This document shows, in pieces, positions 27,203-61,967 of a stretch of 64,000 bases of DNA; within the stretch, counting starts at the first letter, position 1, and the number at the start of each line of letters is the position of its first letter. The notes under the pieces were generated by a model. The model was given only the letters and a program-made list of their open reading frames with translations. It ran no database searches and was not told the DNA's origin. The DNA is taken from the IMG/VR virus record IMGVR_UViG_3300008448_000001, positions 62,001 through 126,000 of that record. One strand, given 5' to 3'. The translations under genes were made by a program, and so were the position numbers.

Positions 27203-27317
27203 CAGTATTAGCTTTGCGTGTACTGCGTTATTTTCTCTTGCGTCAGCTGGCAGTCACTTTACGCTTTGACTATACTGCTTGACCGGGTTTTTGTTTGTCT
27301 CATGTACAGAGGTAGCT

Positions 27318-32009: not shown

Positions 32010-32549
32010 ATGGCTCTTTACGACGAAACAAAGTCGGCGATTGATGCAGTTATTGGCGAGTACAAGAAAGTCGTGGCGGACGGGAAGATCAGTATTTCCG
32101 AGGTGTTCACGCTTGTCGGGCGAGCGACGGCCACGTTTGTCAACTTGTTCCGTTCCTTGGGTCTTGGTACCGAGAGCGAGCAAAAGGAAACCGTTGTTCT
32201 GGCGATCGGTCGCTTTTACGACGAAATTGTAGCTCCGATTGACATCACCGGGATTCCGAACTTCCTGGAACCTGTCGTTGACCGCGCGATGAAAGAGTTG
32301 CTCCTTTTGTTGACTCGATCGTGGGCTGACTCGCTCGTAGCTGTTTTCAGCAAAAGCGAAATCATTGTGCGACAACAGGCTGCGATGGTTCTTCGAGATT
32401 CAGCGTTGCTGCAAAACCCGCAGGTTTCGGAACAAGTCGAAGCCGGTCCACAGGGAACATCTGGTCCGCAAGCAAGCGATGCGAACTTTGAGGCACAAGT
32501 TGTTCAGCGCATTGTCGAAGACGTGCGTTCTGCGGTTGTCATTTACTAA
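32010..32549 (+). CDS. Hypothetical alpha-helical protein
   Basis: 179-aa ORF in the operon. Confidence 0.65.
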   Translation: MALYDETKSAIDAVIGEYKKVVADGKISISEVFTLVGRATATFVNLFRSLGLGTESEQKETVVLAIGRFYDEIVAPIDITGIPNFLEPVVDRAMKELLLLLTRSWADSLVAVFSKSEIIVRQQAAMVLRDSALLQNPQVSEQVEAGPQGTSGPQASDANFEAQVVQRIVEDVRSAVVIY

Positions 32550-34724: not shown

Positions 34725-37700
34725 ATGTCCAGAATAGACTCGAGCATTCTAGGTTCAAAGCCTTTCAGTTTACTGACGCCAACTCCTCAGCCTTTAAACC
34801 AGCCTGAGGAGTTGGACTTTCGTGAGTTCGGTGACACGGACGCAACGCGAAAAAGCATTTACGACAATGTCTTGTCGGCGGCTAGTTCGATCGAGCCCAT
34901 ATCGAATGCAAGGCACACGCTTCGGTTAACTGGCGTGGAATACGCTGATCCGGACACGGTTAGCAAGAAGCAGCAGAAAGAAGCTATTCTAAACGGCATC
35001 AGTGTTGGCCGAAGGCTTCGCGGGACTTGGGAGCTTCTCGACAACGAGACACAGCAGGTTCTCGACCGTAAACGTGCCGTTCTCGCTACAATTCCATACT
35101 TGACGGAACGTGGTACGTTTATCAACAACGGGACGGAGTACACGCTAAAAAATCAGCAACGGTTGCTTCCAGGCATCTACACACGTATACGGGACAACGG
35201 TGAGATCGAGTCCCACGCGAACGTTATGCCGGGCAAGGGGGTTTCGCACCGTTATTTTTTGGATCCGGAGAAAGGCGTATTTAAGATCAAGGTCGGCCAA
35301 GGCACAGTCGGGCTGACCCCCCTCTTAAAGCTCATGGGTGCCACACCGGAGCAGCTGAAGGAAGCGTGGGGCAAGGATCTTTTCGCGACTAACTACAACA
35401 ATGACGCCGCTTCGGAGTACATCAAACTCAAACAAAAGTTTTTGAATAACTCCGAAATGCAGGGAACCGAAGCGGAGCAGCGTCAAGCTTTAATCGACAA
35501 GTTTGCACGCATGGAGCTGGACCCGCAGGTGACAGCCAGAACACTAGGTCGCCCACATAAAAACATTACGCTCGATACGCTGTTAGACGTGACCCGCAAG
35601 CTTGTAAGCGTGAGCAAGAACGAGGCCGACCCGGACGACCGGGACGCGTTGACCTATCAGCAGTTTCTAGGGCCCGAGGATTTGCTTGCGGAGCGATTGC
35701 AACGCGACAAAGACGGCATTCGCCGACAGCTGCTATGGAAGGCGTCCTGGAAGGGTAACTTACAGAGCATGCCTTCTTCGTCGCTTGGAAAACAAGTTCT
35801 TTCGGCTTTGCTGACAAGCGGATTAGGTCAAGCGATCGAGGAAATTAACCCAGCAGAGCTTTACGATAAAACGACATCGGTTAGCCGACTCGGCGAGGGT
35901 GGTATTCCATCGACGGACGCTATTCCGAAGGAAGCTCGCAGCGTACAGCCAAGCATGTTTGGTTACGTCGATCCGTTGCGTACCCCGGAGTCCGGTAAAG
36001 TCGGCGTGGATACTTATCTGGCGAGAGGTGTCCGAAAGGGTAAGAACGGAAAGCTGTACGCTCAGTTTCGAGAGCTGAAGACAGGAAAACTTGTTTACCG
36101 GACACCGCAAGAAGTTGCGGATCTCACGCTTGGATTTCCCGGCAGCCAGCAGGAGGACGCCCCTCGGGTTCCCGCCATGCGAGGGGGAAAGATGCTTTAT
36201 GTGCCCAAGTCGCAGATCGACTTAGAGCTGCCCGCCATGGAGGAAGCCTTCAACCAGCTGTCAAACATGATTCCCATGAAGAGTCAGGTCAAAGGGCAGC
36301 GACTTGTGATGGCGTCCAGAATGACAACGCAGGCTTTGCCGCTAGTTGACGCGGAATCGCCTTTGGTGCAGTCTGCTGTTCCGGGTACTAACGGCAACCA
36401 AAGCTATGAGGAACTGTATTCGAAGGGGATGGGTGCGCTGCGTGCACCTCAAGCTGGCGTAGTACTCGGTGTCGACAAAGAGGGTATTCACGTTCGATAC
36501 GAAGACGGCACAAACGCAACGCACGAGCTGTATCACAATTTTCCGTTCAACCGTAAAACTTTTGTGCACCAGACATCCGCAGTGCAGCCGGGCGATCGGT
36601 TTAATCCCGACCAGCTTTTAGCCTATTCCAATTACACGGACAAGCAGGGTGCTGCGGCGTTGGGGAAAAACGCAAGAACAGCCTACATTGCCTGGCAAGG
36701 GAAGAACTTTGAGGATGCCGCGGTTATCTCTGAAAGCTACGCGAAAAAGATGAGTTCCGAGCACATGTACCAACATGACCTGGAGCTTGACGCCAAGACG
36801 GTAGCTGGCAAAGGGAAGTATGTTTCTGCGTACCCTGGAAAATACGACAAACGCATCTTAGAGAACATTGACTCGAGTGGTGTGATTAAACCGGGTACGA
36901 TCGTGCACCGGGGTGATCCGCTTATCCTTGGTTTGCGGCAAAACGAAACGGCCCACAACAAAGTGCACAAAAAGGGTAAAACCGCTTTTAGCGATGCTGC
37001 GGTGACTTGGGAGCACAATGACAGCGGCGAAGTCACTGATGTTGTCATGGGCAAGCGAGGGCCGACTGTTGTGGTTAAAATGTCGGCGCCGATGCAGGTG
37101 GGCGATAAACTTTCGGGAAGGTACGGTGACAAGGGAGTCATCGCGGACGTGATACCTGATTCGCAGATGCCACACGATTCTCAAGGTCGACCTTTCGAGG
37201 TTTTAGTGAACCCACTGGGTGTTATCACTCGGACTAACCCAAGTCAGTTGTCCGAGCTTTTTCTTGGTAAGATCGCCGAGAAGCGTGGCAAGCCGATCAA
37301 GGTCGAGGACTTTGATTCTTCGAAGGATATGAACGAATGGGTGTTGCAGGAGCTCGCCCGCGAGGGTTTAAGCGACCTAGAGGACGTTGTTGACCCTACA
37401 CGCGATCGCAAGGTCAAAGGTATTGCCACGGGCAGTCGCTTCTTCATGAAGCTGCACCACACAGCGGAAGGCAAAGGGCAAAGCCGTGGCGGTGGCTCTT
37501 ACACGATGGAAGACACCCCGGCGAAAGGCGGGGCAGAGGGTTCTAAGCGGATAGGTATGCTCGATACCAACGCGTTGCTATCGCACGGAGCTACTGCAAC
37601 GCTGCAGGACATCAGCACGGTGCGGGGGCAAAAGAACGACGACTATTGGATGCAGTTCATGTCGGGTTACAACCCGCAAGTAACCAAGGTACCGCACGTC

Positions 37701-39164
37701 TACCAGAAGTTCGTCAATCAGTTGCGAGCTGCCGGGGTTAATGTTGTCAAGCAAGGAACGCAGCTCAACATTATGGCCCTCACGGATAAAGACATCGACG
37801 AGCTCGCCGGTGACCGGGAGTTGAGCAACTCGGAGGGTGTCGACTGGGGCAGTGATCTAAAGGAGCTGCCTGGCGGTTTGTTCGACAAAGCTAAGACAGG
37901 CGGACACGGCGGAAATCGTTGGACATACATCAAGCTGCACGAGCCTATGCCTAACCCGGTCATGGAAGAACCCATTCGGAAAATACTGGGGATGACACAG
38001 AAGAAGTTCGATGCTGTGATTGCTGGCGACGACACGATCGACGGTCACGGGTCGGGTCCGACTGCGATTCAAAAAGCACTTAAAGCGATAAACCTGGACA
38101 GCGAAATCGAGAAGACGCGTGCAGTGATCTCGGCGGGCAGAGCTTCCGAGCGAGATAACGCTATCCGCAAGTTGGGGTATTTGAAGAGTGCACGAAAACT
38201 TAAGCTGCATCCTTCGGACTACATGCTTACGAAAGCTCCTGTTATGCCGCCAATGTTTCGTCCGATCAGCATGATGAGCAACGACATGCCGCTCATCAAC
38301 GACGCGAACTACCTTTACAAGGAGCTGTTCGAAGCCAACAAAAACCTTCAAGAGATTCAGAAGGCGGTGGGGGCAGATGGTTCCGGACCCGAGCGGTTGG
38401 CTACGTATCAGGCGTTCAAGGCTGTGACCGGCCTCGGTGACCCGATTAGTCAAAAGAGTCGGGACAAGAATGTACAAGGCGTGCTTAGGTCCGTGTTCGG
38501 CAGCAGCCCCAAGTTCGGTACGTTGCAACGAAAGCTTATTTCGACCACCGTGGATAATGTGGGCCGTGCGGTCATTACGCCGAACCCTGACTTGGACATG
38601 GATTCTGTGGGTTTACCGGAGGACAAAGCATTCAAGGCATACGAGAAGTTTGTCACGCGAAGGCTGGTGCGTAAAGGCATGTCCTTCAGGGAAGCAAGAC
38701 AGCAGATTGTAGATCGCACGGACTTGGCGAGAAACTCGCTGCTTGAAGAGATGGACGCGAGACCCGTTTACATAAGCCGTGCCCCGGTGTTGCACAAGTT
38801 TGGCATATTGGCGATGCGACCGAGGCTTACGAAAGGTGATACACTTCAGGTAAGCCCTTTGATTGTAAAAGGCTTCGGTGCGGATTTCGACGGTGACGCG
38901 ATGAATTATCACGTACCTAGCCTGGAGAAATCCGTCGAAGAAGCGTATGCTAAGCTGCTTCCAAGTCGTAATTTGTTTAGCATGTCTGACTTCAAGTCCG
39001 TAATGCACGCTCCGGCGAACGAATACGTCAGCGGGCTTTACCATGCGACGAAAAGCAAAAGCGAAAGGCCGGTAAGAATTTTCCGAACTATCGCCGAAGC
39101 GAAACAAGCGTACAGCCGAAAAGAAATTTCCGTTGATGACAGAATCAAAATCCTTGAAGCCTAG
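34725..39164 (+). CDS. rpoBC: Multisubunit-type RNA polymerase, beta fused to the catalytic N-half of beta'
   Basis: beta motifs GTFINNGTE, RLGEGG, PLRTPESGKVG, NFEDA, GDKLSGRYGDKGVI, NPLGV, MKLHH. beta' motifs PVMPPMFRP, GRAVI, RAPVLH and catalytic GADFDGD. Confidence 0.95.
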   Translation: MSRIDSSILGSKPFSLLTPTPQPLNQPEELDFREFGDTDATRKSIYDNVLSAASSIEPISNARHTLRLTGVEYADPDTVSKKQQKEAILNGISVGRRLRGTWELLDNETQQVLDRKRAVLATIPYLTERGTFINNGTEYTLKNQQRLLPGIYTRIRDNGEIESHANVMPGKGVSHRYFLDPEKGVFKIKVGQGTVGLTPLLKLMGATPEQLKEAWGKDLFATNYNNDAASEYIKLKQKFLNNSEMQGTEAEQRQALIDKFARMELDPQVTARTLGRPHKNITLDTLLDVTRKLVSVSKNEADPDDRDALTYQQFLGPEDLLAERLQRDKDGIRRQLLWKASWKGNLQSMPSSSLGKQVLSALLTSGLGQAIEEINPAELYDKTTSVSRLGEGGIPSTDAIPKEARSVQPSMFGYVDPLRTPESGKVGVDTYLARGVRKGKNGKLYAQFRELKTGKLVYRTPQEVADLTLGFPGSQQEDAPRVPAMRGGKMLYVPKSQIDLELPAMEEAFNQLSNMIPMKSQVKGQRLVMASRMTTQALPLVDAESPLVQSAVPGTNGNQSYEELYSKGMGALRAPQAGVVLGVDKEGIHVRYEDGTNATHELYHNFPFNRKTFVHQTSAVQPGDRFNPDQLLAYSNYTDKQGAAALGKNARTAYIAWQGKNFEDAAVISESYAKKMSSEHMYQHDLELDAKTVAGKGKYVSAYPGKYDKRILENIDSSGVIKPGTIVHRGDPLILGLRQNETAHNKVHKKGKTAFSDAAVTWEHNDSGEVTDVVMGKRGPTVVVKMSAPMQVGDKLSGRYGDKGVIADVIPDSQMPHDSQGRPFEVLVNPLGVITRTNPSQLSELFLGKIAEKRGKPIKVEDFDSSKDMNEWVLQELAREGLSDLEDVVDPTRDRKVKGIATGSRFFMKLHHTAEGKGQSRGGGSYTMEDTPAKGGAEGSKRIGMLDTNALLSHGATATLQDISTVRGQKNDDYWMQFMSGYNPQVTKVPHVYQKFVNQLRAAGVNVVKQGTQLNIMALTDKDIDELAGDRELSNSEGVDWGSDLKELPGGLFDKAKTGGHGGNRWTYIKLHEPMPNPVMEEPIRKILGMTQKKFDAVIAGDDTIDGHGSGPTAIQKALKAINLDSEIEKTRAVISAGRASERDNAIRKLGYLKSARKLKLHPSDYMLTKAPVMPPMFRPISMMSNDMPLINDANYLYKELFEANKNLQEIQKAVGADGSGPERLATYQAFKAVTGLGDPISQKSRDKNVQGVLRSVFGSSPKFGTLQRKLISTTVDNVGRAVITPNPDLDMDSVGLPEDKAFKAYEKFVTRRLVRKGMSFREARQQIVDRTDLARNSLLEEMDARPVYISRAPVLHKFGILAMRPRLTKGDTLQVSPLIVKGFGADFDGDAMNYHVPSLEKSVEEAYAKLLPSRNLFSMSDFKSVMHAPANEYVSGLYHATKSKSERPVRIFRTIAEAKQAYSRKEISVDDRIKILEA

Positions 39165-39178
39165 GGCTGGAGAAGATC

Positions 39179-39829
39179 GTGACTATTAACAAGCAATTGC
39201 TGCGCGATGCGCTTTCTAATTTACAGAAGCAGGGTTTTGTGGCTGCGGGAGACCCCGCGATGGGTGGGGCACCTCCGGCGGACCCGGCTGCAATGGGCGG
39301 AGGAGCACCTCCGATGGACCCGGCTGCGATGGGCGGTGGAGCTCCTCCTGCCGATCCGGCTGCAATGGGTGGCGGTGATCCGCTCGCGGCACTTGCGCCC
39401 ATGATTCAGCAAATGGTGCAACAAGCTGTTTCCGCTGGCGGGGGTGGGGGCGGCGGCGGTATGGCAGGCGGCGGCATCAAGCCGAAGATCGACGTTAACG
39501 TTGAACTTTTGCAAATCAAGAAGCTGCTGGCACGCATCGTTGATGCCTTAGGGATTCAAGTTCCTGCGGCAGAGATGGTTGCAACTTCCGACGACCTGAA
39601 CCAGATGGCAAGCCAACAGGGTGGGGGTGCCGCAGGCGGTGGTGCTGCTGCTGGCGGCGGTGCCTTAGGCTCCATTCAACCGATGCAACCAATGAAAGCC
39701 GCTTATGCCCGCGAAGAATGGGACTTTGGCGAAGTTTACGGCGGTCAGCTTTCTGCTGTGCAGCAGTCCCAGCAGAGCACGGCTCTAAAGGCTATCGCAG
39801 CTTTACGTCAAAGGCAAGACAGTGTTTAA
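39179..39829 (+). CDS. Gly/Ala/Pro/Met-rich low-complexity protein
   Basis: Tandem DPAAMGGGAPP repeats, GTG start. Confidence 0.7.
   Translation: MTINKQLLRDALSNLQKQGFVAAGDPAMGGAPPADPAAMGGGAPPMDPAAMGGGAPPADPAAMGGGDPLAALAPMIQQMVQQAVSAGGGGGGGGMAGGGIKPKIDVNVELLQIKKLLARIVDALGIQVPAAEMVATSDDLNQMASQQGGGAAGGGAAAGGGALGSIQPMQPMKAAYAREEWDFGEVYGGQLSAVQQSQQSTALKAIAALRQRQDSV
39250..39380 (+). repeat. About 33-bp coding tandem repeat (DPAAMGGGAPP, about 4 copies)
   Basis: Visible degenerate repeats of GACCCGGCTGCAATGGGCGG…. Confidence 0.8.
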
Positions 39830-40046
39830 CGTAGAGATTTTAGAGCGAATAGGTCAAAAGCCTATCGTTGTTCCGGCATCGCAAGTGGTTGTTCGAATGC
39901 CGGACGGTACACCGATCAGCGTCGCAGCGTTGTACGGCAGTAGTAGTTCCGTCATGGTTTCGCACTGTACGGACAAGGATTTCCAAGAAACATTGGGTAA
40001 GCTTGGAATAAAAGAGAAAGTTATAGTCACTCAGATAAAGGTGTGA
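39822..40046 (+). CDS. Small beta-rich hypothetical protein
   Basis: 74-aa ORF overlapping the upstream stop. Confidence 0.6.
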   Translation: MFNVEILERIGQKPIVVPASQVVVRMPDGTPISVAALYGSSSSVMVSHCTDKDFQETLGKLGIKEKVIVTQIKV

Positions 40047-40047
40047 A

Positions 40048-40737
40048 ATGGACGACGCAACAAATCGCTCAACCGACAAGTACTACCGAGAAAAACCGAA
40101 ACCGTTATTTCGGCAGACAAGAGAAGGGCGTGTTCGCCGCGAGAGTTCTTTTGTCTACCAGCAAGTGCAAAACGATGTTAACGCGTCGAACGACAAGTAT
40201 TACAAGTCTCCGTCGCCGACTGCGGTTCCTGTTGAAGCTTTGGCGAAACTTGCGAGGTCAAAGCTCGTTGACATTGACGACGCGTCGCAGGCGGTTACCG
40301 AAATAGCGTCTGCGTTTTCCGACAGCTATGACGCTGTTGTGCTCAACGTGTACGCGGAACAATTGGCAGGCGTTAAAGTCGCCGTCGACTTGGCAGTAGG
40401 TCGTAGCATTATCACCCGCGAACAAGCTGACAGCGTGTCATTCGCGACACGGCCTGCACCTGTCGCCGCTGCTTTGCCACAAGCCGAAGTAGGAAATGCT
40501 CCGCGAGTCGAGGTCGTCCCTGACGCGTTCGCAAAGGGTGGAAAGCGTCGACGCGGACGCAAGGCCAGCGAAGCAGTTGTCGAAGACAACGCCGGGGAAG
40601 CAGCGGGGCTTGAGGCATCGCTGGACGCTACACCGGAGACCTCGCAAGATGAACCTCAGGTAGATGAACCTCAGGTAGATGAACCTCAAACGGAAACGAC
40701 ACAGGCCGAAGTTAACGCTGACGATAGCGACGAGTAA
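40048..40737 (+). CDS. Hypothetical protein with acidic tail
   Basis: 229 aa, DEPQV repeats. Confidence 0.7.
   Translation: MDDATNRSTDKYYREKPKPLFRQTREGRVRRESSFVYQQVQNDVNASNDKYYKSPSPTAVPVEALAKLARSKLVDIDDASQAVTEIASAFSDSYDAVVLNVYAEQLAGVKVAVDLAVGRSIITREQADSVSFATRPAPVAAALPQAEVGNAPRVEVVPDAFAKGGKRRRGRKASEAVVEDNAGEAAGLEASLDATPETSQDEPQVDEPQVDEPQTETTQAEVNADDSDE
40648..40688 (+). repeat. 15-bp tandem repeat GATGAACCTCAGGTA (about 2.7 copies)
   Basis: Direct reading. Confidence 0.9.
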
Positions 40738-40785
40738 GCGGAGCAAATTTGCTTATAGTCGCAGACATGCAAGTGCGAAACAGGG

Positions 40786-40812
40786 ATGCGGCGGGGTCCA
40801 ACTCCGCCGCAT
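40786..40812 (+). promoter_or_regulatory. Strong leader hairpin before the second RNAP chain
   Basis: ATGCGGCGGGG-TCCAA-CTCCGCCGCAT, no U-tract. Confidence 0.4.
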
Positions 40813-40842
40813 TAACAAGAAGCTAGACATGGAGCTTTTTGG

Positions 40843-42807
40843 ATGGCATTAGAAACAACTGTAGGCCAGATTCTAGTAAACGACGTGTTACCGGAGGAAC
40901 TACGCGACTACAGCCGTACTTTGGACAAGTCGGCACTTAGCTCGTTGCTCAAGGATGTCGCGAGAAAGCATCCCGAGAAGTACAGGGACATCTCCTTTCA
41001 GCTCAATCAGATAGGCCGACATTCGGCACAGGAGCAGGGCGGTTTGTCTTTCGGGGCCAGGCACCTTCGAAAGAGTAAGGCAGCTGCCGCCATTCAGGAC
41101 AGGATAAAGGGTGAGTTGTTTGGCATTCTTGCCGACGACAATTTAACCGACCAGCAACGCACAGACAAAATTGTACGCGTGGTAGGTCGTGAAAGTTCTG
41201 CGCAACAGCGTGCAGTACTGGACGAGGCCGTGAAAGAAGGCAATCCTTTAGGCCTACAAGTTCTCTCGGGGTCTCGGGGTAAGCCGATGAACCTTGCCAG
41301 CTTGCTAGCCGCCGACATGCTTTACTCGGATCACCGCGACGAAGTCATACCGGTACCTGTGCTTAGAAGTTACAGCCAAGGGTTGACGCCAGCGGAGTAT
41401 TGGGCAGGCACATACGGGGCCCGCCGAGGTATTATTGCCACGAAGTTTGCTACGCAGGAAGCAGGATTTTTGTCGAAACAGCTCAATCAAGCCGGGCACA
41501 GGCTTGTTGTCGTCGACGAAGAAAGCGAGGATGAGAATCCTGGTTTGCGGGGTTTGATCGTCGATACCGATGATATGGATAACGAAGGAGCTTTGCTTGC
41601 CCAGGACACCGGTCCGTTTCACCGCAACACTCCCCTCACCCCGAAAATACTCAAGCAGCTTAAGCGACTCGGCAAGGATCGGATTCTGGTTCGCTCTCCG
41701 CTTATTGGAGGTTCACCCGAGGGTGGCGTTTATGCGAGAGATGTCGGCGTACGTGAGAAGGGCCTCCTTCCAGGCCGGGGCGAGCAAGTAGGTTTACAGG
41801 CCGCCCAGGCGCTCAGCGAACCGATTAGTCAGGGCCAGCTTTCTGCCAAGCACTCCGGGGGTGTGGCAGGGCAAGAAAAAGCTGTTGGTGGTTTTCAATA
41901 CATCAACCAACTAATTCAAACACCTAAAAAAATGCAAGGCGGTGCGGCACATTCTACTGTCGACGGCGTTGTTCAGCGGATTGAACCAGCACCTGCCGGA
42001 GGTAACTACGTCACGGTCGGTGGCGAGCGGCATTATGTGAACGCGGGCTATGAACTCAAGGTCAAGCGAGGCGACGACGTAGAAGCCGGTGACATGCTAA
42101 GCGAAGGCATCCCAAATCCGGCGATTATCACGAAGTACAAGGGTGTAGGCGAGGGTCGTCGCTATTTCGTGCAGGAGTTCAAAAAGGCGATGTCTTCCAG
42201 TGGCATGCTCGGGCATCGGCGGAACATTGAGCTGCTTGCAAGAGGTTTGATAAATCACGTGCGTCTTACCGAGGAAGTCGGTGACCATGTCGAAGACGAT
42301 ATCGTACCGTACACGACACTTGAACACACTTACAAGCCACGCGACGGTTTTCAAGCGTTGGCTCCCAAAAAGGCGGTGGGTAAATACCTGGAAAGGCCTG
42401 TTTTGCATTACACGATAGGCACTAAAGTTCGCCCGTCCATGTTAAAAGATTTTGACGATTTCGGCGTGAGCTCGCTGGAAGTCCATGACGCTCCTCCGCC
42501 TTTCGAGTCGCACATGGTTCGTGGGATGTACCAGCTGCAGCACGATCCGGACTGGCTAACGCAGATGTACGGGTCGGGTCTAAAAGAAAGCCTGCTGGAA
42601 TCTACGGCACGCGGGGCGACTAGCGAAGAACGCGGGTCTAGCTTTGTTCCAAGCTTGGCGACAGGGACGGATTTCGGCGACGTCCCGAATCGAGTTGTCA
42701 TACAACCCAAGGCACCGTACGCTTTGCCGGACGTACCGATACCTGATATACCAGAAGTTAAGGATAGTCTCATATCGTCAAAAAGTCTCACACCGAGACT
42801 CCTGTAA
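40843..42807 (+). CDS. rpoC: RNA polymerase beta' C-terminal chain (bridge helix, trigger loop)
   Basis: TTVGQ, SGSRG, GLTPAEYW…GARRGIIATKFATQEAGFLSKQL (bridge helix), GEQVGLQAAQALSEPISQ…KHSGG (trigger loop), RRNIELL. Confidence 0.92.
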   Translation: MALETTVGQILVNDVLPEELRDYSRTLDKSALSSLLKDVARKHPEKYRDISFQLNQIGRHSAQEQGGLSFGARHLRKSKAAAAIQDRIKGELFGILADDNLTDQQRTDKIVRVVGRESSAQQRAVLDEAVKEGNPLGLQVLSGSRGKPMNLASLLAADMLYSDHRDEVIPVPVLRSYSQGLTPAEYWAGTYGARRGIIATKFATQEAGFLSKQLNQAGHRLVVVDEESEDENPGLRGLIVDTDDMDNEGALLAQDTGPFHRNTPLTPKILKQLKRLGKDRILVRSPLIGGSPEGGVYARDVGVREKGLLPGRGEQVGLQAAQALSEPISQGQLSAKHSGGVAGQEKAVGGFQYINQLIQTPKKMQGGAAHSTVDGVVQRIEPAPAGGNYVTVGGERHYVNAGYELKVKRGDDVEAGDMLSEGIPNPAIITKYKGVGEGRRYFVQEFKKAMSSSGMLGHRRNIELLARGLINHVRLTEEVGDHVEDDIVPYTTLEHTYKPRDGFQALAPKKAVGKYLERPVLHYTIGTKVRPSMLKDFDDFGVSSLEVHDAPPPFESHMVRGMYQLQHDPDWLTQMYGSGLKESLLESTARGATSEERGSSFVPSLATGTDFGDVPNRVVIQPKAPYALPDVPIPDIPEVKDSLISSKSLTPRLL

Positions 42808-43132: not shown

Positions 43133-45646
43133 ATGACGACGATCAAAAAGGCGAGTATTGGCGGCAGTGGCGGAGAGACTGAGTTTGAGCAGGCTTTCTC
43201 CAGTTTGGCCTATGCTTATTTGCGAGACAAGGCACCGCGACTGCTGGATCACATGATCGGCTTTCAGCTCGTTGACCGAAATGATGACAACACGAAGGCG
43301 ATGGGTGTTTTCGGCTTTCAGTTGGGGTCGCAATGGCTTTATGCTCCCGTGTTCTTCTTGAACGGTGACCTTAAAGGCCACGAGCTCCTTTACATCAAGA
43401 ACAACGATTCGTTTGTTCCGATGAAGGAGAACTGGATCAATTACATCATGAGCCGTAAGCCGCACATTCTTGGCGAGTCGTCGGCTTCCAAGCTGCGAGA
43501 TCTCGGGGGTGTATATCCCGACGTCCGCACGCTGTCTATTCCGCCTTCCATCGGTGGCGGCAAGCGAGCTAGCGACAGCTACAGGGTGAAGCAACTGCCC
43601 AAGGCTGCCTTTGATTCGGTCTTACCGTTACTTGCTGCTTTCAAGACGCAGGCCGCCAGCTCCTTGTTCAAGATCGCCGGAGGCTCACTTAAAGGTCGCA
43701 AGCTCGATCAGTCCGCCGTCGTTGCTGAGCCGTTTAAGGTGGCTTTCGCTAAAACGGCTGCTGCGTTTGACATGAACACGGTTCTGCCGCAAAGTTCGGA
43801 GCTGCTGTTCAAAGCTTATGCTGTCGCTGAAAAGTATCCCTTGGTTAAATCCGCTTTTAACCGTTTTTACGGTGACGACTGCTTTATGCGTTGGGGTTTG
43901 GCGTGCAAGCAAAACGCCAAGCAAGCTTCGCAAAGCATCGTCAAATCGTCGGCAGCTAAGCCGTCTTCTCTTAGCGGTATGCGACTGATCCCTGACTCCC
44001 AGGGCGAAACCGTGGATCACGTCAAGGCTGGTAACCTTCGGCTTTACACCGCCGAGTCGGGTATGGCGAACCGTGTACCGGAGCTTGACGACGCTGAGCG
44101 TGAACGTTTATTGAATGACACCATGCTTATCGTCGACCATCGAAAGGGTATTCAGGTCAGCCGAACGTACAACACGCAAATCGAGCAGAAGCTTACGAAT
44201 CCTTCCGAGACGTCGCTTTACCGCGTCTTGGAGAAGCCTGGCAAGTTCAGCAAAATGCTCGTTTTGACTCACGGCAGCAGCAATCGTGGCCGCGAGCCTT
44301 TTGTGGTTGTTATCCGGTTGGGCGAAGGGGGCGAGTCGCGCAATTGGATTAGCACGCACGCGACGAATGTTTTTGCGGATCAGATAAGCGAAAGGGACGA
44401 GTGGGATTCCTGGTTTGAGTCCTTGGCAGACGCCAGTTCGCTTTCCGAAAACGGTGTTTACGTTGGTTTGGATGCAACAGGCTCGGCCACTGTTCCGTTT
44501 ACTGTGCAGGAGTCGCTGGGTGACGGTAACTATCGCGTGAACTTTCACACGCATGTTCGTTACGACAACGATCGAGGCTCGACTATGCCTCGCCTTCTCA
44601 AGGTGACCGATCCGTACACGATGGATGGCTACAACCAGCCTAGCACTTACAATGCGTTGCTTTGCGTGGACAAAGAAAACAAACGCGGTACAAAACTCAG
44701 GGCAATCGCGGGTGAGTTGCGTGTCCCAGCCGGCTTTAAATTTATGAAGCTGCCAAGTTCTGACGATAGCGGCTGCGGCTGTGGCTCGTGCGAACCGGCG
44801 GATAAAGACAGTCCGATACAGTTGGGTAGCATCGATGACATTCAGTTGCTGATTCACGAAAAGACGGCCCGGCTCAAGGTTTTCAATAACGGGACGGATG
44901 TCTTTATTGACTCGGTCCTTGGCAAGCACAGCTTTTCAAAACGTGCAGCTTTGTGGGATCTTGTCAGCGTCCACGGTATGCGGGAAGACGTTTCGCGGGA
45001 GATTCTCAAGCAAGCGGAATCACGCGGCAGTGCTGTTTACCGCATAGAGTATGCTCCCGGCTACGGTACGCAAAAAAAGGCGTATCCTAACCACAGCGTA
45101 TTGGCGGGTGGTCCCGATGCACCTGTGTATGACGACTTGGCAGACGAGAGAAGCACGGAGCAATACGGTCCGAGAACCTCGGCAAACACGCAATACGCAG
45201 GTAACGCGGTTTATCGTTTGAACCACATGAGTGCGGACCAGACTGATCCGGGAGTCTGGGATCCTTGGCAAAACTACGAGGCCCAGGACTTCGGTACTTC
45301 CATGCAGGTGGCCCAACAAGCCGGAGCGCAAGGGCAAAAGGAAGTCTTTGATACGACGATGATTTCCGGCATGCTGAAATCTGTTCGGCAAGACTCGCTT
45401 GTCGAACGGCACTTGTCGCCGCTTGTCGAATCGCTTGATTCGCTTGGGCGTTTGCTGATGAACTTTTACTGGCACGGTGAAGAGTTTGAAGACCGTTACG
45501 GCAAGGCGGATATGCCCGAGCTGGAAGATAGTCTTCGTAACGCGTTTGAGGCTATCGGTGACATCACTTTGTTCCTCAAAGAGAAGTCGGTAGAATCACC
45601 GTTTGACGAAGGAGATGTGAACTTGGACGAGCTTTCTAGGAACTAG
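43133..45646 (+). CDS. Large head-module protein
   Basis: 837 aa with many K-x-A motifs, located in the head operon. Confidence 0.7.
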   Translation: MTTIKKASIGGSGGETEFEQAFSSLAYAYLRDKAPRLLDHMIGFQLVDRNDDNTKAMGVFGFQLGSQWLYAPVFFLNGDLKGHELLYIKNNDSFVPMKENWINYIMSRKPHILGESSASKLRDLGGVYPDVRTLSIPPSIGGGKRASDSYRVKQLPKAAFDSVLPLLAAFKTQAASSLFKIAGGSLKGRKLDQSAVVAEPFKVAFAKTAAAFDMNTVLPQSSELLFKAYAVAEKYPLVKSAFNRFYGDDCFMRWGLACKQNAKQASQSIVKSSAAKPSSLSGMRLIPDSQGETVDHVKAGNLRLYTAESGMANRVPELDDAERERLLNDTMLIVDHRKGIQVSRTYNTQIEQKLTNPSETSLYRVLEKPGKFSKMLVLTHGSSNRGREPFVVVIRLGEGGESRNWISTHATNVFADQISERDEWDSWFESLADASSLSENGVYVGLDATGSATVPFTVQESLGDGNYRVNFHTHVRYDNDRGSTMPRLLKVTDPYTMDGYNQPSTYNALLCVDKENKRGTKLRAIAGELRVPAGFKFMKLPSSDDSGCGCGSCEPADKDSPIQLGSIDDIQLLIHEKTARLKVFNNGTDVFIDSVLGKHSFSKRAALWDLVSVHGMREDVSREILKQAESRGSAVYRIEYAPGYGTQKKAYPNHSVLAGGPDAPVYDDLADERSTEQYGPRTSANTQYAGNAVYRLNHMSADQTDPGVWDPWQNYEAQDFGTSMQVAQQAGAQGQKEVFDTTMISGMLKSVRQDSLVERHLSPLVESLDSLGRLLMNFYWHGEEFEDRYGKADMPELEDSLRNAFEAIGDITLFLKEKSVESPFDEGDVNLDELSRN

Positions 45647-48630: not shown

Positions 48631-49771
48631 TATTTCTTACGAACAAGGTTTAAAGCTGCTTTTGCTTCGCAAGCAAGCCTTGGACGCAGGCACAGTTCGG
48701 AGGCTTCCGCCTGCTGCCCTCGCGAACTCCTTTTTGATGGACTCAACCGGGAAGCAAGTCATCAAACAAGCTGCAGGGTTTTGGGATCAGCTGAAGGACA
48801 CTTATCAGTCTGGCATGAACAAGATCACCACGGATCCAGGGCTGCAAGCTACGCTGGGATACGGTTTGGCGGGTGCGGGATTGGGTGCCGCTGGTGCTGG
48901 CGGCCTGGCAGCAGCTCGCGGAGAGAAAAACTGGAAGCGTCGTTTGTTGCAGGGAGCCACTGCGGGCGGCTTGCTCGGAGGCGGGCTCGGACTTGCGATG
49001 AACCCTGGCAGCGTCACCAAGCCGCTGGAAGACCGTGCCGCAAGATTGACGGAACAAGGCATGCAAACTGGCGAGCTTTCGGAAGAGGACAAGAAACAGA
49101 ACTACGTCGAACAGCTTAAAGCCACAGCGAACGCAAATCCTGCGATGGGCGCTGCCGGAACCGCTGCGGCGGGTGTTGGGCTCGGTGTCGGGGCTTCTCG
49201 CGTCGCCCGTACGTTTCCGGGGATGAAACCGATTGATCACCGGTACATCGCGGAGAATTTGGTCGAAAGCTATTTGAAAGATTCGAATTCGGTTAACAAA
49301 GACTTGATAGAAAAGCTTGTAGATCCGAAAAAAATAACTGACTCGGCCTGGCTCGACCCTGCACGACAACAAAAGCAACAACAAGTTATCGAGTTTCTAA
49401 ACCAGGGGGGTCAGCAGGTGCTTGATTCGGCGACCGATCCTGCGTTTAAAACCAATTTCATCGACGCGCTTCAGGATAAATTGCCTGGAAATTTTACGGC
49501 GACCGAAGCCGGAGTGAGTTCGTTGTTTAACGATAAGGAAACGCGGGATCGAGTCGCAAAGAACTTTATCAACCGCGGTCTTCACAGTAACGCCACTGGC
49601 ACAAAGAGCCAGAGAGCGATGTTACCGACGCTACGTCGCGGAGCTCTTGGTGGAACGATCGGTGCCTTGGGCGGCATTTGGAGCCTTGTGCAGTACATGC
49701 GAGACAGGCAAGCGCAGCAGGACGCTACTGCGCAGCTCGAAGCCTTACGCGATGGAAGTGGCACCCCTTAA
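48608..49771 (+). CDS. Glycine-zipper virion protein
   Basis: RKQA, IKQA, several GxxxG helices. Confidence 0.7.
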   Translation: MKPVSLANISYEQGLKLLLLRKQALDAGTVRRLPPAALANSFLMDSTGKQVIKQAAGFWDQLKDTYQSGMNKITTDPGLQATLGYGLAGAGLGAAGAGGLAAARGEKNWKRRLLQGATAGGLLGGGLGLAMNPGSVTKPLEDRAARLTEQGMQTGELSEEDKKQNYVEQLKATANANPAMGAAGTAAAGVGLGVGASRVARTFPGMKPIDHRYIAENLVESYLKDSNSVNKDLIEKLVDPKKITDSAWLDPARQQKQQQVIEFLNQGGQQVLDSATDPAFKTNFIDALQDKLPGNFTATEAGVSSLFNDKETRDRVAKNFINRGLHSNATGTKSQRAMLPTLRRGALGGTIGALGGIWSLVQYMRDRQAQQDATAQLEALRDGSGTP

Positions 49772-49788
49772 TACTCGCAGGAGCAGGT

Positions 49789-51267
49789 ATGATTAAATTT
49801 GTATCGCCGTCAGGCTGGGAATTCGACAGGCAAATTGTTGTGCCCGTTAAAGTCAGTAGCCGAGGGCTTATCGGCAACGACAGGCGTGACTTCTTAAAGA
49901 CTGCGAGTCACGCCTTTTTGCCGCACGTCGACAATTACAAGTTTGCAAGCGACGAGATACCTGTGCATTTGATTGCACTCGGGGCGAGCGAAGCCTACGG
50001 TCCGAATCGCAACGGTGACGGTTTCAAGGAAGCGACTTGCAAAAAGTATCATGACACCTTTGTCAAGCTTGCTAAGTTTTTTCGAAACCACAAGAACAAG
50101 CCGGAACGCGGTGATCCTTTTTATGGGTATGTTAAAGCTTCTGCCTACAACGACGACATGCGACGGGTTGAGTTGCTTTGTGCGTTGAACGCCAACAAGG
50201 CGGCAGCGGATCGTAACGGTGGCCTGGTCGCCGACACCGAAGTGGAGAAGATTGCAAGGGGCGAAGACTTTCCGGTGAGCATGGCTTGTCGCGTACCGAA
50301 TGACATTTGTTCGTTCTGCAAGCACGCCGCAAAAACCCGGGACGAGTATTGCACCAGTGAGAAATGCGCCGCAGGCGGTTGCAGACACAACCTTTCGCGG
50401 TTGGTGAAAGTTGGCGGTGACTTACATCACCTGCACGTTGACAACCCTGACCCGGCTTGGTTCGACATTTCGCGTGTCTTTAGGCCAGCCGACCGTATCG
50501 CTTATGGTGCCAAGGCGGACTACTTTACAAAAGCGGCCTCTGACGATGGGATTTTTGATCTCCAAGATTGCATCAAAATGTCTTGTAACTCCACGGCACC
50601 GCTTGACGTGATCTTGTACCAGTCCGGGCAGCACGGTTTCTGGTCCGAAAAGACAGCATCTCAAATTCGACTCGGTTACGCCCTGGCTACCGCCGAGAAG
50701 ACTTCGGCGTTGCCTGACACCTTGTTGGCTGGTATAGCCACGCAAGCTTTTCCGATCGAGAAGCTTGCGGCTTTCGGTACCCCTACCTGTGACCGCCAGC
50801 TGGCGGCCTTGGCAGACCGTTGCATATTTTTAAGCCTTGCAGATTACGGCAGGCTTTCTGCTCGGTCGACGCATGTTAAAGCTGCGCAGAATGTGTTGCC
50901 GTCGATTTACGGTACGATGGCCACTGACGAGTCGTTGCCACTACGGATAGAGCAGTCGCCTTCGGTGCTGATTGATAAGGTTGCTACTTTTAAGGACGAT
51001 CTCCTGGCGACTTCTCTCGTCAAAGATTTTTCTTTTTACAAGGAATCTGTTTATCTCCGAAGCATGTTGGGCTGTTGTCGCGAGTCTCGAATACCTAAAA
51101 TCGGAAAACATGAGAAGCTTGCGGCGTGTAATTTTGAGAGTAAGGCGTTAGCTGAAGACTACGCTATGTATAAGCTGGCAGCACTTTGGCGGTCAGCCGC
51201 TCACAATCCAAACTTCCCGTTGACAGTGCGGTTCGCCGTCTGTCAGAATCAACTTTTTAGCGTGTAA
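49789..51267 (+). CDS. Prohead maturation protease (HK97/assemblin-like fold) with Cys-rich insertion
   Basis: NRNGDGF, candidate catalytic His in FRNHKN, Ser in PVSMAC, and DISRVFRPAD (E/D-x-S-x-V-x-x-PA-like). Lies directly upstream of scaffold-like and capsid genes. Confidence 0.7.
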   Translation: MIKFVSPSGWEFDRQIVVPVKVSSRGLIGNDRRDFLKTASHAFLPHVDNYKFASDEIPVHLIALGASEAYGPNRNGDGFKEATCKKYHDTFVKLAKFFRNHKNKPERGDPFYGYVKASAYNDDMRRVELLCALNANKAAADRNGGLVADTEVEKIARGEDFPVSMACRVPNDICSFCKHAAKTRDEYCTSEKCAAGGCRHNLSRLVKVGGDLHHLHVDNPDPAWFDISRVFRPADRIAYGAKADYFTKAASDDGIFDLQDCIKMSCNSTAPLDVILYQSGQHGFWSEKTASQIRLGYALATAEKTSALPDTLLAGIATQAFPIEKLAAFGTPTCDRQLAALADRCIFLSLADYGRLSARSTHVKAAQNVLPSIYGTMATDESLPLRIEQSPSVLIDKVATFKDDLLATSLVKDFSFYKESVYLRSMLGCCRESRIPKIGKHEKLAACNFESKALAEDYAMYKLAALWRSAAHNPNFPLTVRFAVCQNQLFSV

Positions 51268-53627: not shown

Positions 53628-53664
53628 CGAGTCTTAGACTCGATTAACCATGGAGGTTACGTTA

Positions 53665-61898: not shown

Positions 61899-61967
61899 TT
61901 CCTGTCGCTTGCAAACAGTTGTTTGGTTTATAATTGGTGGTCAGTTAACTTTACAGGTGAGTCACGC

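What the first reader, a model, noticed from the sequence alone, without database searches (positions are those of the whole stretch)
34725..42807. Bacterial-like RNA polymerase in two chains with an unusual fusion and split, embedded in the head module
Seen: one 1479-aa chain holds a compact beta plus beta' through the catalytic DFDGD (here GADFDGD), so both double-psi barrels are in one polypeptide. A second 654-aa chain holds the bridge helix and trigger loop. The beta' N-terminal zinc-ribbon cysteines are missing (GGLFDKAKTGGHGGNRWTYIKL), and no alpha or sigma gene is recognisable in the window. Established: phiKZ-type RNAPs are split into more, highly diverged pieces, and phage lineages with multisubunit RNAPs are known. 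Inference: a minimal, probably virion-packaged RNAP; the three small genes between the chains are candidate accessory factors.
Basis: partly seen in the sequence, partly recalled or inferred. Interest (0 to 1): 0.7.

Follow-up and report, generated by a model that had tools for sequence, protein, structure and literature searches.

The report
Two-chain phage RNA polymerase with own sigma
A 205-kb uncultured jumbo phage encodes a bacterial-type RNA polymerase in two chains (beta fused to the front of beta', the rest of beta' separate), with no zinc sites, no cysteine and its own sigma factor; the design is shared by a large uncultured phage clade and by Salmonella phage Arash, but no paper I found describes it.

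Summary
Window 34725-39164 encodes a 1479-aa chain made of a trimmed beta joined directly to beta' residues ~1-553 (E. coli numbering). It holds both double-psi barrels and GADFDGD. Window 40843-42807 encodes the rest of beta', with bridge helix and trigger loop. The beta' zinc ribbon is deleted.

- No alpha or omega gene was detected in the 204.8-kb genome.
- A conserved sigma70-family gene lies 15.8 kb beyond the window. A complex model places it on the beta' clamp helices.
- Packaging into virions is supported only indirectly: virion proteomics of a 30%-identical relative (phage Arash), position among virion-protein genes, and a complete lack of cysteine in both chains and the sigma.
- The three genes between the chains are mostly low-complexity and poorly conserved, so they are weak candidates for subunits.

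The architecture is widespread. All 150 listed 50%-identity clusters have E &lt;= 1e-116, and almost all carry the match more than 1000 residues in. It also occurs in phage Arash and Vibrio phages D69, D148 and D181. I found no paper describing the fusion and split, the zinc loss or the cysteine loss. I rate it a new variant of a known kind, of moderate interest.

The parts
34725..39164 (+). RNAP chain 1 (1479 aa): beta (residues ~1-1008) joined directly to beta' N-terminal part (residues ~1014-1479, ending near E. coli beta' 553). It holds both double-psi beta-barrels and has no cysteine.
   Evidence: Pfam Rpb2_6, Rpb2_3, Rpb1_1, Rpb1_2; PDB alignments; alignments to E. coli beta and beta'; cysteine count.
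35811..35903 (+). Counterpart of the rifampicin-resistance-determining region of beta (residues 363-393). In E. coli numbering it reads Q510G, S512G, F514A, D516E, H526K, R529S.
   Evidence: Alignment; coordinates. Insensitivity to rifampicin is an inference from known resistance positions.
37101..37139 (+). Beta barrel active-site motif GDKLSGRYGDKGV (the conserved lysines).
   Evidence: Alignment to E. coli GDKMAGRHGNKGV; coordinates.
37872..37937 (+). Site where the beta' zinc ribbon is deleted: GGLFDKAKTGGHGGNRWTYIKL.
   Evidence: Alignment with E. coli beta' 55-100. The deletion is shared by Arash, D69 and the metagenomic relatives aligned.
38301..38426 (+). Beta' clamp helices (coiled coil), the predicted docking site of the phage sigma.
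   Evidence: Aligns to E. coli beta' ~262-309. The complex model's interface residues 152-200 of the 1030-1479 segment fall here.
38877..38897 (+). Catalytic GADFDGD (three Mg-binding aspartates).
   Evidence: Relatives read NADFDGD, GADFDGD or AADYDGD.
39179..39829 (+). 216-aa ORF, Gly/Ala/Pro/Met-rich with DPAAMGGGAPP repeats, no cysteine. Only its C-terminal half is conserved, in relatives with >=~57% RNAP identity.
   Evidence: No Pfam or PHROG hit; the Atlas search gave only unnamed viral clusters.
39822..40046 (+). 74-aa ORF, probably a small folded protein. Conserved in relatives L015, L016, L017 and L020 only.
   Evidence: No family hit; the Atlas search gave nothing usable.
40048..40737 (+). 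229-aa ORF with a basic patch and an acidic DEPQV-repeat tail, no cysteine. Detectable only in the two closest relatives.
40785..40813 (+). 13-bp G+C-rich hairpin in the 105-nt gap before chain 2. A second stem follows that includes the GGAG ribosome-binding site. No U-tract follows the first hairpin.
   Evidence: Fold of 40738-40842: -43.4 kcal/mol, z = -4.9. A comparable hairpin is seen in L020 but not in L015-L017.
40843..42807 (+). RNAP chain 2 (654 aa): beta' C-terminal part starting near E. coli beta' 574. It has the bridge helix (41398-41499) and trigger loop (41779-41919), lacks SI3 and has no cysteine. The second beta' zinc site is lost (41527-41553 and 41689-41748).
   Evidence: Pfam Rpb1_5; PDB alignment; alignment to E. 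coli; coordinates.
43133..45646 (+). 837-aa conserved protein that follows chain 2 in every relative examined, with other genes between in some. Its N-terminus resembles Arash gp218, a protein detected in virions.
   Evidence: No Pfam or PHROG hit. The AF2 model (pLDDT 63.9) had no significant PDB match.
49678..51267 (+). Homologue of Arash gp222, annotated as a structural protein.
   Evidence: tblastn: 40% identity over 182 aa.
53650..54612 (+). Major capsid protein, homologue of Arash gp226.
   Evidence: tblastn: 29% identity over 301 aa, E 1.9e-33.

Best explanation
This is the catalytic core of a phage-encoded, bacterial-type RNA polymerase built from two chains.

Chain 1 is beta tethered to the first ~40% of beta'. 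It carries both double-psi barrels, so the beta lysines and the beta' aspartate triad that form the active centre sit in one polypeptide. Chain 2 supplies the bridge helix, the trigger loop and the rest of the clamp and jaw.

No alpha or omega gene is detectable. I infer that the covalent beta-beta' tether takes over part of the assembly role of the alpha dimer.

Promoter recognition is most likely by the phage's own 244-aa sigma70-family factor, encoded 39 kb downstream of chain 2. It is predicted to dock on the beta' clamp helices as cellular sigmas do.

The core and sigma are probably packaged in the capsid and delivered with the DNA to start transcription without the host enzyme. Because the genome holds only one RNAP set, newly made enzyme would then continue transcription later in infection. 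The enzyme is predicted to be insensitive to rifampicin.

Shown here: homology, architecture, conserved catalytic motifs, loss of both zinc sites and of all cysteines, conservation of the design and of the sigma across the clade.

Inferred: sigma use (model only), packaging, rifampicin insensitivity, replacement of alpha.
For: Architecture and catalytic motifs.

The design is conserved:
- It is present in 6 IMG/VR relatives (49-80% identity in chain 2) and in Arash and D69 (24-30% identity).
- More than 120 clusters of ~1470-1500-aa fused proteins occur on contigs up to ~250 kb.
- All 150 listed 50%-identity representatives have E <= 1e-116, and almost all carry the match more than 1000 residues into the protein.
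- The fused sequences form one group in a beta'N tree (support 100/99).

Genome content: a single RNAP set and no alpha or omega hit.

Sigma:
- Sigma70_r3 scores 32.4 bits against a cut-off of 25.3.
- It is a homologue of Arash gp10.
- More than 120 homologous clusters of the same length exist, some also with Sigma70_r4 hits.
- The top listed PDB fold matches of its model are sigma factors or sigma-bearing initiation complexes (E 2.8e-7, prob 1.00).
- Complex model of beta'N plus sigma: score 0.69, best of 3 controls 0.00. That mark was reached by 58 of 80 solved complexes and 2 of 110 mismatched pairs. My own alignments were used, so these counts hold only roughly. The interface falls on the clamp helices.

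Packaging:
- Arash gp206 had the most spectra in virion mass spectrometry (3516). gp216 (1210) and gp10 were also detected (PMC10585845).
- The genes sit in one co-directional block with homologues of Arash virion proteins and the capsid protein.
- There are zero cysteines in 2377 residues of core plus sigma, against 1.38% genome-wide (p ~4.5e-15). 77 of 85 fused homologues and 118 of 120 sigma homologues also have none.

Rifampicin: substitutions at E. coli beta 510, 512, 514, 516, 526 and 529.
Against: - Packaging is not shown for this phage.
- The Arash virion preparation also contained ribonucleotide reductase, RNA ligases, a kinase and a pyrophosphatase. Its authors note that abundant infection proteins may have been carried over.
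- Arash is only ~30% identical to this phage.
- Cysteine loss is an indirect signal. The capsid and portal proteins of this phage do contain cysteine.
- The complex model may pass from memory of solved sigma-core complexes, so it shows likeness rather than binding.
- The sigma lacks the aromatic residues typical of region 2.3, and the beta flap tip, the usual region-4 site, is shortened.
- I found no shared promoter motif.
- A divergent alpha-like or omega-like protein would escape Pfam scans.
Confidence: 0.6

Rival explanations
1. The enzyme is not packaged. The host RNA polymerase transcribes the early genes and the phage RNAP genes. The phage enzyme then takes over middle and late transcription, as expected for phages with separate beta and beta' genes such as the Rhizobium Kleczkowskaviridae.
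For: - There is no direct virion evidence for this phage.
- The Arash virion proteome includes many non-structural enzymes, so carry-over is plausible.
- The portal and terminase genes are far from the RNAP genes.
Against: - The genes lie in a long co-directional block with capsid and other virion-protein homologues. If that block is late, an unpackaged RNAP needed for late transcription would have to be made by another enzyme first.
- Arash gp206 has the highest spectral count in the virion preparation.
- The core and sigma are free of cysteine, unlike most of the proteome.
Confidence: 0.3
2. The phage sigma does not serve the phage core. It redirects the host RNA polymerase, as T4 gp55 or SPO1 gp28 do, and the phage core uses another, unrecognised specificity factor or none.
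For: - Phage sigmas that act on host core are common in large phages without their own RNAP (PMC7824862).
- phiKZ/AR9-type phage RNAPs work without sigma.
- The flap tip of the phage beta is shortened.
Against: - The sigma is conserved at the same length in more than 120 clusters of the same metagenomic clade, and it is present in Arash, where it is also found in the virion preparation.
- The complex model places it on the phage clamp helices: score 0.69, best control 0.00, with the caveats given.
- It shares the cysteine-free trait of the core.
Confidence: 0.2
3. This is the first reader's idea: the three small genes between the chains (216, 74 and 229 aa) are accessory subunits of the polymerase.
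For: - They are tightly packed between the two chains on the same strand.
- The 216-aa and 229-aa proteins are cysteine-free like the core.
- The C-half of the 216-aa protein and the 74-aa protein persist in relatives down to ~57% RNAP identity.
Against: - None is detectable in L018 or L019 (~50% identity), or in Arash or D69. There the space between the chains is 0.6-5.1 kb, with other genes, some on the opposite strand.
- Two of the three are low-complexity, probably disordered proteins.
- They have no family, feature or fold lead.
- Disordered, cysteine-free proteins here fit co-packaged internal virion proteins at least as well.
Confidence: 0.12
4. The genes are bacterial rpoB and rpoC carried into the record by mis-assembly or recent capture, with the frame fused by an error.
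For: Several 'phage' database records that matched are in fact bacterial rpoBC contamination.
Against: - Identity to any bacterial beta or beta' is only ~25-30%.
- The fusion, the split and the zinc-ribbon deletion recur in isolates and in hundreds of metagenomic clusters.
- The record is a complete 204.8-kb genome with terminal repeats.
- The fused sequences form their own group in the tree.
Confidence: 0.01

Closest known systems
Salmonella phage Arash gp206 + gp216 (+ sigma-like gp10), and Vibrio phages D69, D148, D181
   Same: - The fusion (1525-1527-aa beta::beta'N) and the separate ~606-609-aa beta'C are the same.
- The zinc-ribbon deletion is the same.
- A gp218-like gene lies downstream of chain 2.
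- Arash has a gp10 sigma homologue.
- Cysteine is strongly depleted.
- They group with the window's clade in the beta'N tree.
- The Arash proteins were detected in a virion preparation.
   Different: - Identity is only 24-30%.
- Arash and D69 keep the four cysteines of the second beta' zinc site; the window's clade has lost them.
- In Arash the portal gene lies just upstream, a helicase follows chain 2 and a second sigma (gp196) is present. None of this was found here.
- The Arash paper calls the proteins beta and beta' and does not mention the fusion or the split.
phiKZ / AR9-type jumbo-phage virion and non-virion RNAPs
   Same: - Both are phage-encoded relatives of bacterial beta and beta' without alpha or omega.
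- Beta' is split just after its catalytic barrel.
- A virion-packaged form starts early transcription (PMC7598289; PMC13282480).
   Different: - Those enzymes have 4-5 highly diverged pieces with beta also split, come in two paralogous sets per genome, and have no sigma homologue.
- Here beta is intact and fused to beta'N, there is one set, a sigma70-family factor is present, and the sequences are readily aligned to cellular RNAP.
Phage RNAPs with separate beta and beta' genes: mReC contigs (Weinheimer and Aylward 2020) and Rhizobium Kleczkowskaviridae such as RHph_Y65
   Same: - Both are bacterial-like phage RNAPs recognisable with cellular profiles.
- The best PHROG hits of both chains are phrog_24349 and phrog_25354, profiles of 1191 and 1216 positions, i.e. 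about full beta / beta' length.
- The RHph_Y65 beta' groups weakly with the fused clade.
   Different: - Beta' is one unsplit, unfused protein in RHph_Y65 (1127 aa).
- In the part of the mReC table I read, beta is ~900-1520 aa and beta' ~900-1390 aa, and none pairs ~1480 with ~650 aa. Exact-length searches found no such phage row either.
- mReC capsid proteins match the T4 Gp23 family, whereas the capsid protein here has no Pfam hit.
Natural RpoB-RpoC fusions of Helicobacteraceae and Wolbachia
   Same: The beta C-terminus is joined to the beta' N-terminus in one polypeptide (cited in PMC7483510). Here the join is nearly direct.
   Different: The cellular fusions contain the whole of beta', keep the zinc sites and work with alpha and omega. 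Here beta' is cut again after the barrel.
Cyanobacterial and plastid split of beta' into gamma (RpoC1) and beta' (RpoC2)
   Same: The break lies in the same inter-domain region after the catalytic barrel.
   Different: By the PDB alignments, chain 1 ends ~65 residues before the end of gamma, and chain 2 begins before the start of RpoC2. The site is therefore near but not identical, and beta is not fused in cyanobacteria.
crAss-like phage and YonO-type single-chain two-barrel RNAPs
   Same: Both barrels are in one polypeptide. The crAss enzyme is virion-associated (from my own knowledge).
   Different: Those enzymes are too diverged for cellular profiles to recognise them and lack most beta and beta' domains. 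This one keeps nearly the full bacterial domain set.

Membership tests
Bacterial-type multisubunit RNAP core (beta/beta') | Beta barrel with conserved lysines and beta' barrel with the (N)ADFDGD aspartate triad | tested here: met
   GDKLSGRYGDKGV and GADFDGD align to the E. coli motifs. Pfam Rpb2_6 and Rpb1_2 score above their cut-offs.
Bacterial-type multisubunit RNAP core (beta/beta') | Bridge helix and trigger loop | tested here: met
   Chain 2 residues 186-219 and 313-359 align to E. coli beta' 769-805 and to the trigger-loop helices. H936 is kept and SI3 is absent.
Bacterial-type multisubunit RNAP core (beta/beta') | Beta' N-terminal zinc ribbon (four cysteines) | tested here: not met
   It is deleted and replaced by TGG-HGG-N in this phage and in all relatives aligned.
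Bacterial-type multisubunit RNAP core (beta/beta') | Second beta' zinc site (E. coli C814, C888, C895, C898) | tested here: not met
   There is no cysteine at these positions, or anywhere in either chain. The site is kept in Arash and D69.
Bacterial-type multisubunit RNAP core (beta/beta') | Alpha dimer assembly platform and omega | tested here: not met
   PF01000, PF01193 and PF01192 gave no hit at E <= 1 in the whole genome, while all 14 control genomes matched. Very divergent homologues cannot be excluded.
Bacterial-type multisubunit RNAP core (beta/beta') | Initiation by a sigma70-family factor | tested here: inconclusive
   A sigma70-family gene exists and a model supports docking on the clamp helices. 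No functional test is possible with these tools.
Sigma70 family (for the 244-aa protein at G000:C1:141787-142521) | Collinear regions 2, 3 and 4 | tested here: met
   - Region 3 scores above the Pfam cut-off.
- Region-4 Pfam hits occur in several homologues.
- Region 2.4/3.0-like motifs are visible in the alignment.
- Full-length fold matches are to sigma A, B and S chains.
- Region 2 itself is below Pfam detection in this copy.
phiKZ/AR9-type jumbo-phage RNAP | Beta and beta' each split into two or more polypeptides (4-5 in all) | tested here: not met
   Beta is intact and fused; there are two chains in all.
phiKZ/AR9-type jumbo-phage RNAP | Two paralogous sets (virion and non-virion) per genome | tested here: not met
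   There is one locus each for Rpb2_6, Rpb1_2 and chain 2 in the complete genome.
phiKZ/AR9-type jumbo-phage RNAP | No sigma homologue | tested here: not met
   A sigma70-family gene is present.
phiKZ/AR9-type jumbo-phage RNAP | Presence of the enzyme in virions | not testable with these tools
   The only evidence is the proteomics of the distant relative Arash.
mReC (multisubunit-RNAP-encoding Caudovirales, PMC7481178) | Separate full-length beta and beta' genes; T4 Gp23-type capsid protein | tested here: not met
   - This enzyme is fused and split.
- No phage row in the part of the table I read, nor in exact-length searches, has lengths near 1480 and 650 aa.
- The capsid protein has no Pfam hit.
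- Membership of their phylogenetic clade was not tested with their sequences.
Arash-type two-chain phage RNAP (unnamed) | Beta::beta'N fusion of ~1470-1530 aa, separate beta'C of ~600-650 aa, zinc ribbon deleted, gp10-like sigma | tested here: met
   The group is monophyletic in the beta'N tree.

The most novel reading that the evidence does not exclude
This clade uses a self-contained holoenzyme of two core chains plus its own sigma70-type factor. It assembles without alpha or omega, needs no structural zinc and contains no cysteine. It has been shaped for storage in the capsid and passage through the tail into the cell, where it starts host-independent, rifampicin-insensitive transcription. 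It would be the smallest-known sigma-dependent bacterial-type RNAP. Cultured members (Arash, Vibrio D69) make it a workable model for how beta and beta' fold and assemble without the alpha platform.
Probability: 0.35. Interest if true: 0.7.

Novelty: new variant of a known kind. Interest (0 to 1): 0.55.

Why it matters
Phage multisubunit RNAPs are used to ask what the minimal working form of the cellular enzyme is and how it arose.

The forms studied so far are the phiKZ/AR9 type, which is fragmented and sigma-less, and the crAss/YonO type, which is extremely diverged. This type is different:
- It stays close enough to bacterial RNAP to be aligned residue by residue.
- It has nevertheless lost alpha, omega, both zinc sites and every cysteine.
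- It has tied beta to beta', cut beta' after the barrel, and kept a sigma70-family factor.

It is also very common in metagenomes, and cultured hosts exist for distant members. If packaging and sigma use hold, it offers three things:
- a simple system for studying sigma-dependent initiation and alpha-independent assembly;
- a second, independent case of a virion-borne multisubunit RNAP;
- a sequence signature (cysteine-free proteins) that may flag ejected proteins in uncultured phages.

Tried and rejected
- Near-identity DNA search of 34725-42807 against phage records found no match.
- Pfam and PHROG scans of 30+ neighbouring ORFs were almost all blank. Only ribonucleotide reductase, a glycosyltransferase, a collagen-like tail fibre, an HNH nuclease and a metallopeptidase were named.
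- Window ORF 16050-17375 gave a sub-threshold Sigma70_r4 hit. I rejected it: it shows only a weak N-terminal helix-turn-helix and no similarity to Arash sigma gp196.
- A second sigma like Arash gp196, and a helicase like Arash gp217, were not found by phmmer in the genome.
- mReC supplementary tables held none of the relatives' sample ids and no matching length pair.
- An Atlas look-up of the 74-aa and 216-aa proteins gave nothing usable.
- The 837-aa downstream protein gave an AF2 model of pLDDT 63.9 with no PDB match at E <= 0.001.
- A search for an enriched intergenic 8-mer as a promoter candidate found only T-runs and a ribosome-binding-like word. The sigma70 consensus scan around the locus was below shuffle expectation.
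- Host inference failed. Fused copies sit in MAG bins of Gemmataceae, Nanopelagicales, Methylococcales and Chloroflexota. These bins disagree with each other, so the contigs are probably mis-binned phage DNA.
I rebuilt the alignments without them and did not send those sequences.

Full report
**Setting**

The window is bases 62001-126000 of a 204,794-bp IMG/VR virus record with direct terminal repeats, rated complete. Almost all long ORFs are on the + strand. G+C is ~52% with no break around the locus. A near-identity DNA search against phage records found nothing.

**The observation**

The two ORFs are as described: 34725-39164 (1479 aa, P0001) and 40843-42807 (654 aa, P0002).

- P0001 hits Pfam Rpb2_6 (7.6e-44), Rpb2_3, Rpb1_1 and Rpb1_2 (4.4e-20). 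P0002 hits Rpb1_5 (4e-19).
- Against PDB sequences, P0001 residues ~55-1030 align to bacterial beta (best E 7e-62) and residues ~1084-1476 to the N-terminal part of beta' or cyanobacterial gamma (E ~1e-40).
- P0002 aligns to beta' ~658-1155 in Streptomyces numbering.

*The junction and the split.* Aligned with E. coli, the beta C-terminus (…VYQKFVNQLRAAGVNVV) runs within a few residues into the beta' N-terminus (LNIMALTDKDIDEL…). P0001 ends at about E. coli beta' 553. P0002 starts at about 574 (ETTVGQIL against TTVGRAIL). The split therefore removes only a short surface hairpin.

*Zinc ribbon and active site.* The zinc ribbon (C70, C72, C85, C88) is replaced by TGG-HGG-N. GADFDGD is at residues 1385-1391.

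*The beta part is trimmed.* Most of E. coli 230-420 (SI1 and part of the beta2 lobe) and SI2 are absent, and the flap tip is 8 residues shorter. The catalytic lysine motif and NFED are kept.

*Chain 2.* It has the bridge helix and both trigger-loop helices, and it lacks SI3.

1. The second beta' zinc site (C814, C888, C895, C898) is also gone in this phage and its closer relatives. Arash and D69 keep it.

2. Neither chain contains a single cysteine, and neither does the sigma described below.
   - Genome ORFs of >=200 aa average 1.38% Cys, so zero in 2377 residues has p ~4.5e-15.
   - 77 of 85 fused homologues and 118 of 120 sigma homologues are also cysteine-free.
   - Arash gp206 has 1 Cys. 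Arash gp216 has 4, the same number as the ligands of the second zinc site it retains.
   - For comparison, E. coli beta and beta' have 7 and 15.

3. The rifampicin pocket differs at E. coli positions 510, 512, 514, 516, 526 and 529. Several of these give resistance when mutated in bacteria (established knowledge). I therefore predict insensitivity; this is an inference.

**The rest of the transcription machinery**

Whole-genome scans found one RNAP set only. They found no alpha (PF01000, PF01193) and no omega (PF01192), while every control genome matched.

Sigma70_r2 gave nothing. Sigma70_r3 hit a 244-aa ORF at G000:C1:141787-142521, which is 15.8 kb past the end of the window.

- It is the homologue of Arash gp10.
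- It has more than 120 homologous clusters of the same length, some with Sigma70_r4 hits. Several are named sigma factors by JGI.
- The alignment shows region 2.4/3.0-, 3- and 4-like segments.
- An AF2 model (pLDDT 77.9) has sigma factors, or initiation complexes that contain one, as its top listed PDB matches, aligned over ~250 columns (E 2.8e-7, prob 1.00).

I folded the sigma with the beta'N segment (P0001 1030-1479). The score was 0.69, and the best of 3 controls was 0.00. That mark was reached by 58 of 80 solved complexes and 2 of 110 mismatched pairs. These counts hold only roughly, because my own alignments were used.

The confident interface is segment residues 152-200, i.e. P0001 ~1181-1229 if the tool numbered the segment from 1. 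These are the clamp helices. On the sigma side it is residues 23-60 and 88-101. Sigma-core complexes are solved, so the pass may reflect memory. It shows likeness to the canonical interface, not binding.

**How common is the design?**

- The fusion plus split is present in all six IMG/VR relatives fetched (49-80% identity in chain 2). It is also in Salmonella phage Arash (gp206, 1525 aa; gp216, 606 aa) and in Vibrio phages D69, D148 and D181 (24-30% identity).
- A search of 5.8 billion proteins listed more than 120 clusters at >=55% identity and ~1470-1500 aa, on contigs up to ~250 kb.
- An exhaustive search with the beta'N segment returned 150 listed representatives of 50%-identity clusters. 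All have E <= 1e-116, and almost all carry the match more than 1000 residues into the protein.
- Many representatives are 1800-3350 aa long because they carry one to five inteins at conserved sites. One of those sites lies directly after DFDGD.
- In a 22-row tree of the beta'N region, the fused sequences form one group (support 100/99), apart from 4 bacterial and 6 archaeal rows. The Kleczkowskaviridae beta' joins them weakly on a long branch. Sampling is thin, so this is indicative only.

**Context and packaging**

By similarity to Arash, the order here is: chain 1, three small genes, chain 2, gp218-like (43133-45646), gp222-like (49678-51267), major capsid protein (53650-54612), then tail-region genes. 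The portal is at genome 30373-32307 and the large terminase at 185951-188146 on the minus strand. The locus therefore lies in a block of virion-protein genes but not in a compact head module.

In the Arash paper (PMC10585845), gp206 had the most spectra in the virion preparation (3516). gp216 (1210 spectra) and gp10 (467) were detected too, and so were several metabolic enzymes. The authors offer carry-over as an alternative explanation.

The cysteine-free set in this genome includes the core, the sigma, two of the three intervening proteins, a 1174-aa protein three genes upstream of the sigma and a few others. The capsid and portal proteins do contain cysteine. I read this as a hint that the set is stored and delivered together. 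That reading is an inference.

**The three intervening genes**

- The 216-aa protein is Gly/Ala/Pro/Met-rich with DPAAMGGGAPP repeats.
- The 229-aa protein has a basic patch and an acidic repeat tail.
- The 74-aa protein looks folded.

Only the C-half of the first and the 74-aa protein are detectable in relatives down to ~57% RNAP identity. None is detectable at ~50% identity or in Arash or D69. The space between the chains ranges from ~0.6 to 5.1 kb with other contents. No family, feature or fold lead was found. They are therefore unlikely to be conserved subunits. Their binding was not tested.

**Comparison with what is known**

- *phiKZ/AR9 enzymes.* Beta' is split after the barrel there too, at a site said to coincide with the cyanobacterial one. 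Those enzymes have 4-5 pieces, come in two sets and have no sigma.
- *Cyanobacteria.* By the PDB coordinates, the break here lies ~65 residues before the end of cyanobacterial gamma. It is in the same region but not at the same site.
- *Cellular fusions.* Beta-beta' fusions are known in Helicobacteraceae and Wolbachia.
- *mReC.* The mReC tables list separate beta and beta' genes, and no pair near 1480 and 650 aa turned up. RHph_Y65 has an unsplit 1127-aa beta'.
- *Reviews.* Reviews from 2020, 2021 and 2026 do not describe this type, and further searches found no characterisation.

**Verdict**

The enzyme belongs with the Arash-type RNAPs. As an architecture it is a new variant of the known kind 'phage multisubunit RNAP'. 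Confidence by claim:

| Claim | Confidence |
|---|---|
| It is a real RNAP with this architecture | ~0.9 |
| It uses the phage sigma | ~0.65 |
| It is packaged in virions | ~0.55 |

Noticed in passing
window 34725-42807; G000:C1:134691-143478 (outside the window); window 32010-32549, 48608-49771, 51297-52571, 54977-55375, 61923-62561: A subset of proteins has no cysteine at all: both RNAP chains, the sigma, the 216- and 229-aa proteins, a 1174-aa protein three genes upstream of the sigma, and a few others. The proteome average is 1.38%. The trait is conserved in homologues (77 of 85 fused chains, 118 of 120 sigmas).
   Followed up: partly
homologues P0045, P0054, P0070, P0095, P0156, P0163, P0167, P0177, P0240 (relative to P0001 residues ~386-399, 458, 617-620, 797, 837, 915, 940, 1260-1267, 1391-1395): Many homologues of chain 1 carry one to five intein-like insertions of 130-750 aa. 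Most begin with Cys and end in ..GN or ..HN before Ser/Thr, and some have LAGLIDADG or intein Pfam hits. They sit at conserved motifs, including directly after DFDGD. The window's copy has none.
   Followed up: partly
L019:5164-6353; Vibrio phages D181 and D148: In L019, chain 1 is interrupted by ~1.2 kb at residue ~612-617. In D181 and D148 the gene is in two pieces around an annotated homing endonuclease. I did not resolve whether these are inteins or introns.
   Followed up: no
L017:9989-14098: In this relative, the chain 2 homologue is 1369 aa. The beta'C part is followed by an acylphosphatase-like domain and a P-loop kinase-like domain (AAA_18/AAA_33) plus DUF5661. L020 has a long Pro-rich C-terminal extension instead.
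   Followed up: partly
window 40738-40842: The gap before chain 2 folds far better than shuffles (z = -4.9). It forms a 13-bp G+C hairpin without a U-tract, then a stem that sequesters the GGAG ribosome-binding site. L020 has a comparable hairpin; L015-L017 do not.
   Followed up: partly
L027-L032 (DPANN archaeal MAGs): The peptide-pattern scan also recovered DPANN archaeal rpoB-rpoA' loci at 24-27% identity. I did not check which of the six patterns matched them. The window's DGDAMNYHVP reads more like the archaeal/eukaryotic ..EMN.HVP form (from my own knowledge) than the E. coli ..QMAVHVP seen.
   Followed up: no
P0395: A sigma homologue (47% identity) is deposited at NCBI as a hypothetical protein of Sphingorhabdus sp., on a 202,923-bp contig.
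   Followed up: no
window 13294-14109, 27279-29600, 57286-58824, 60810-61898: Other genes that could be named are a thymidylate synthase homologue (38% identity to Arash gp180), a ribonucleotide reductase large subunit, a collagen-repeat tail-fibre protein and a glycosyltransferase (phrog_3408, E 1e-195).
   Followed up: no
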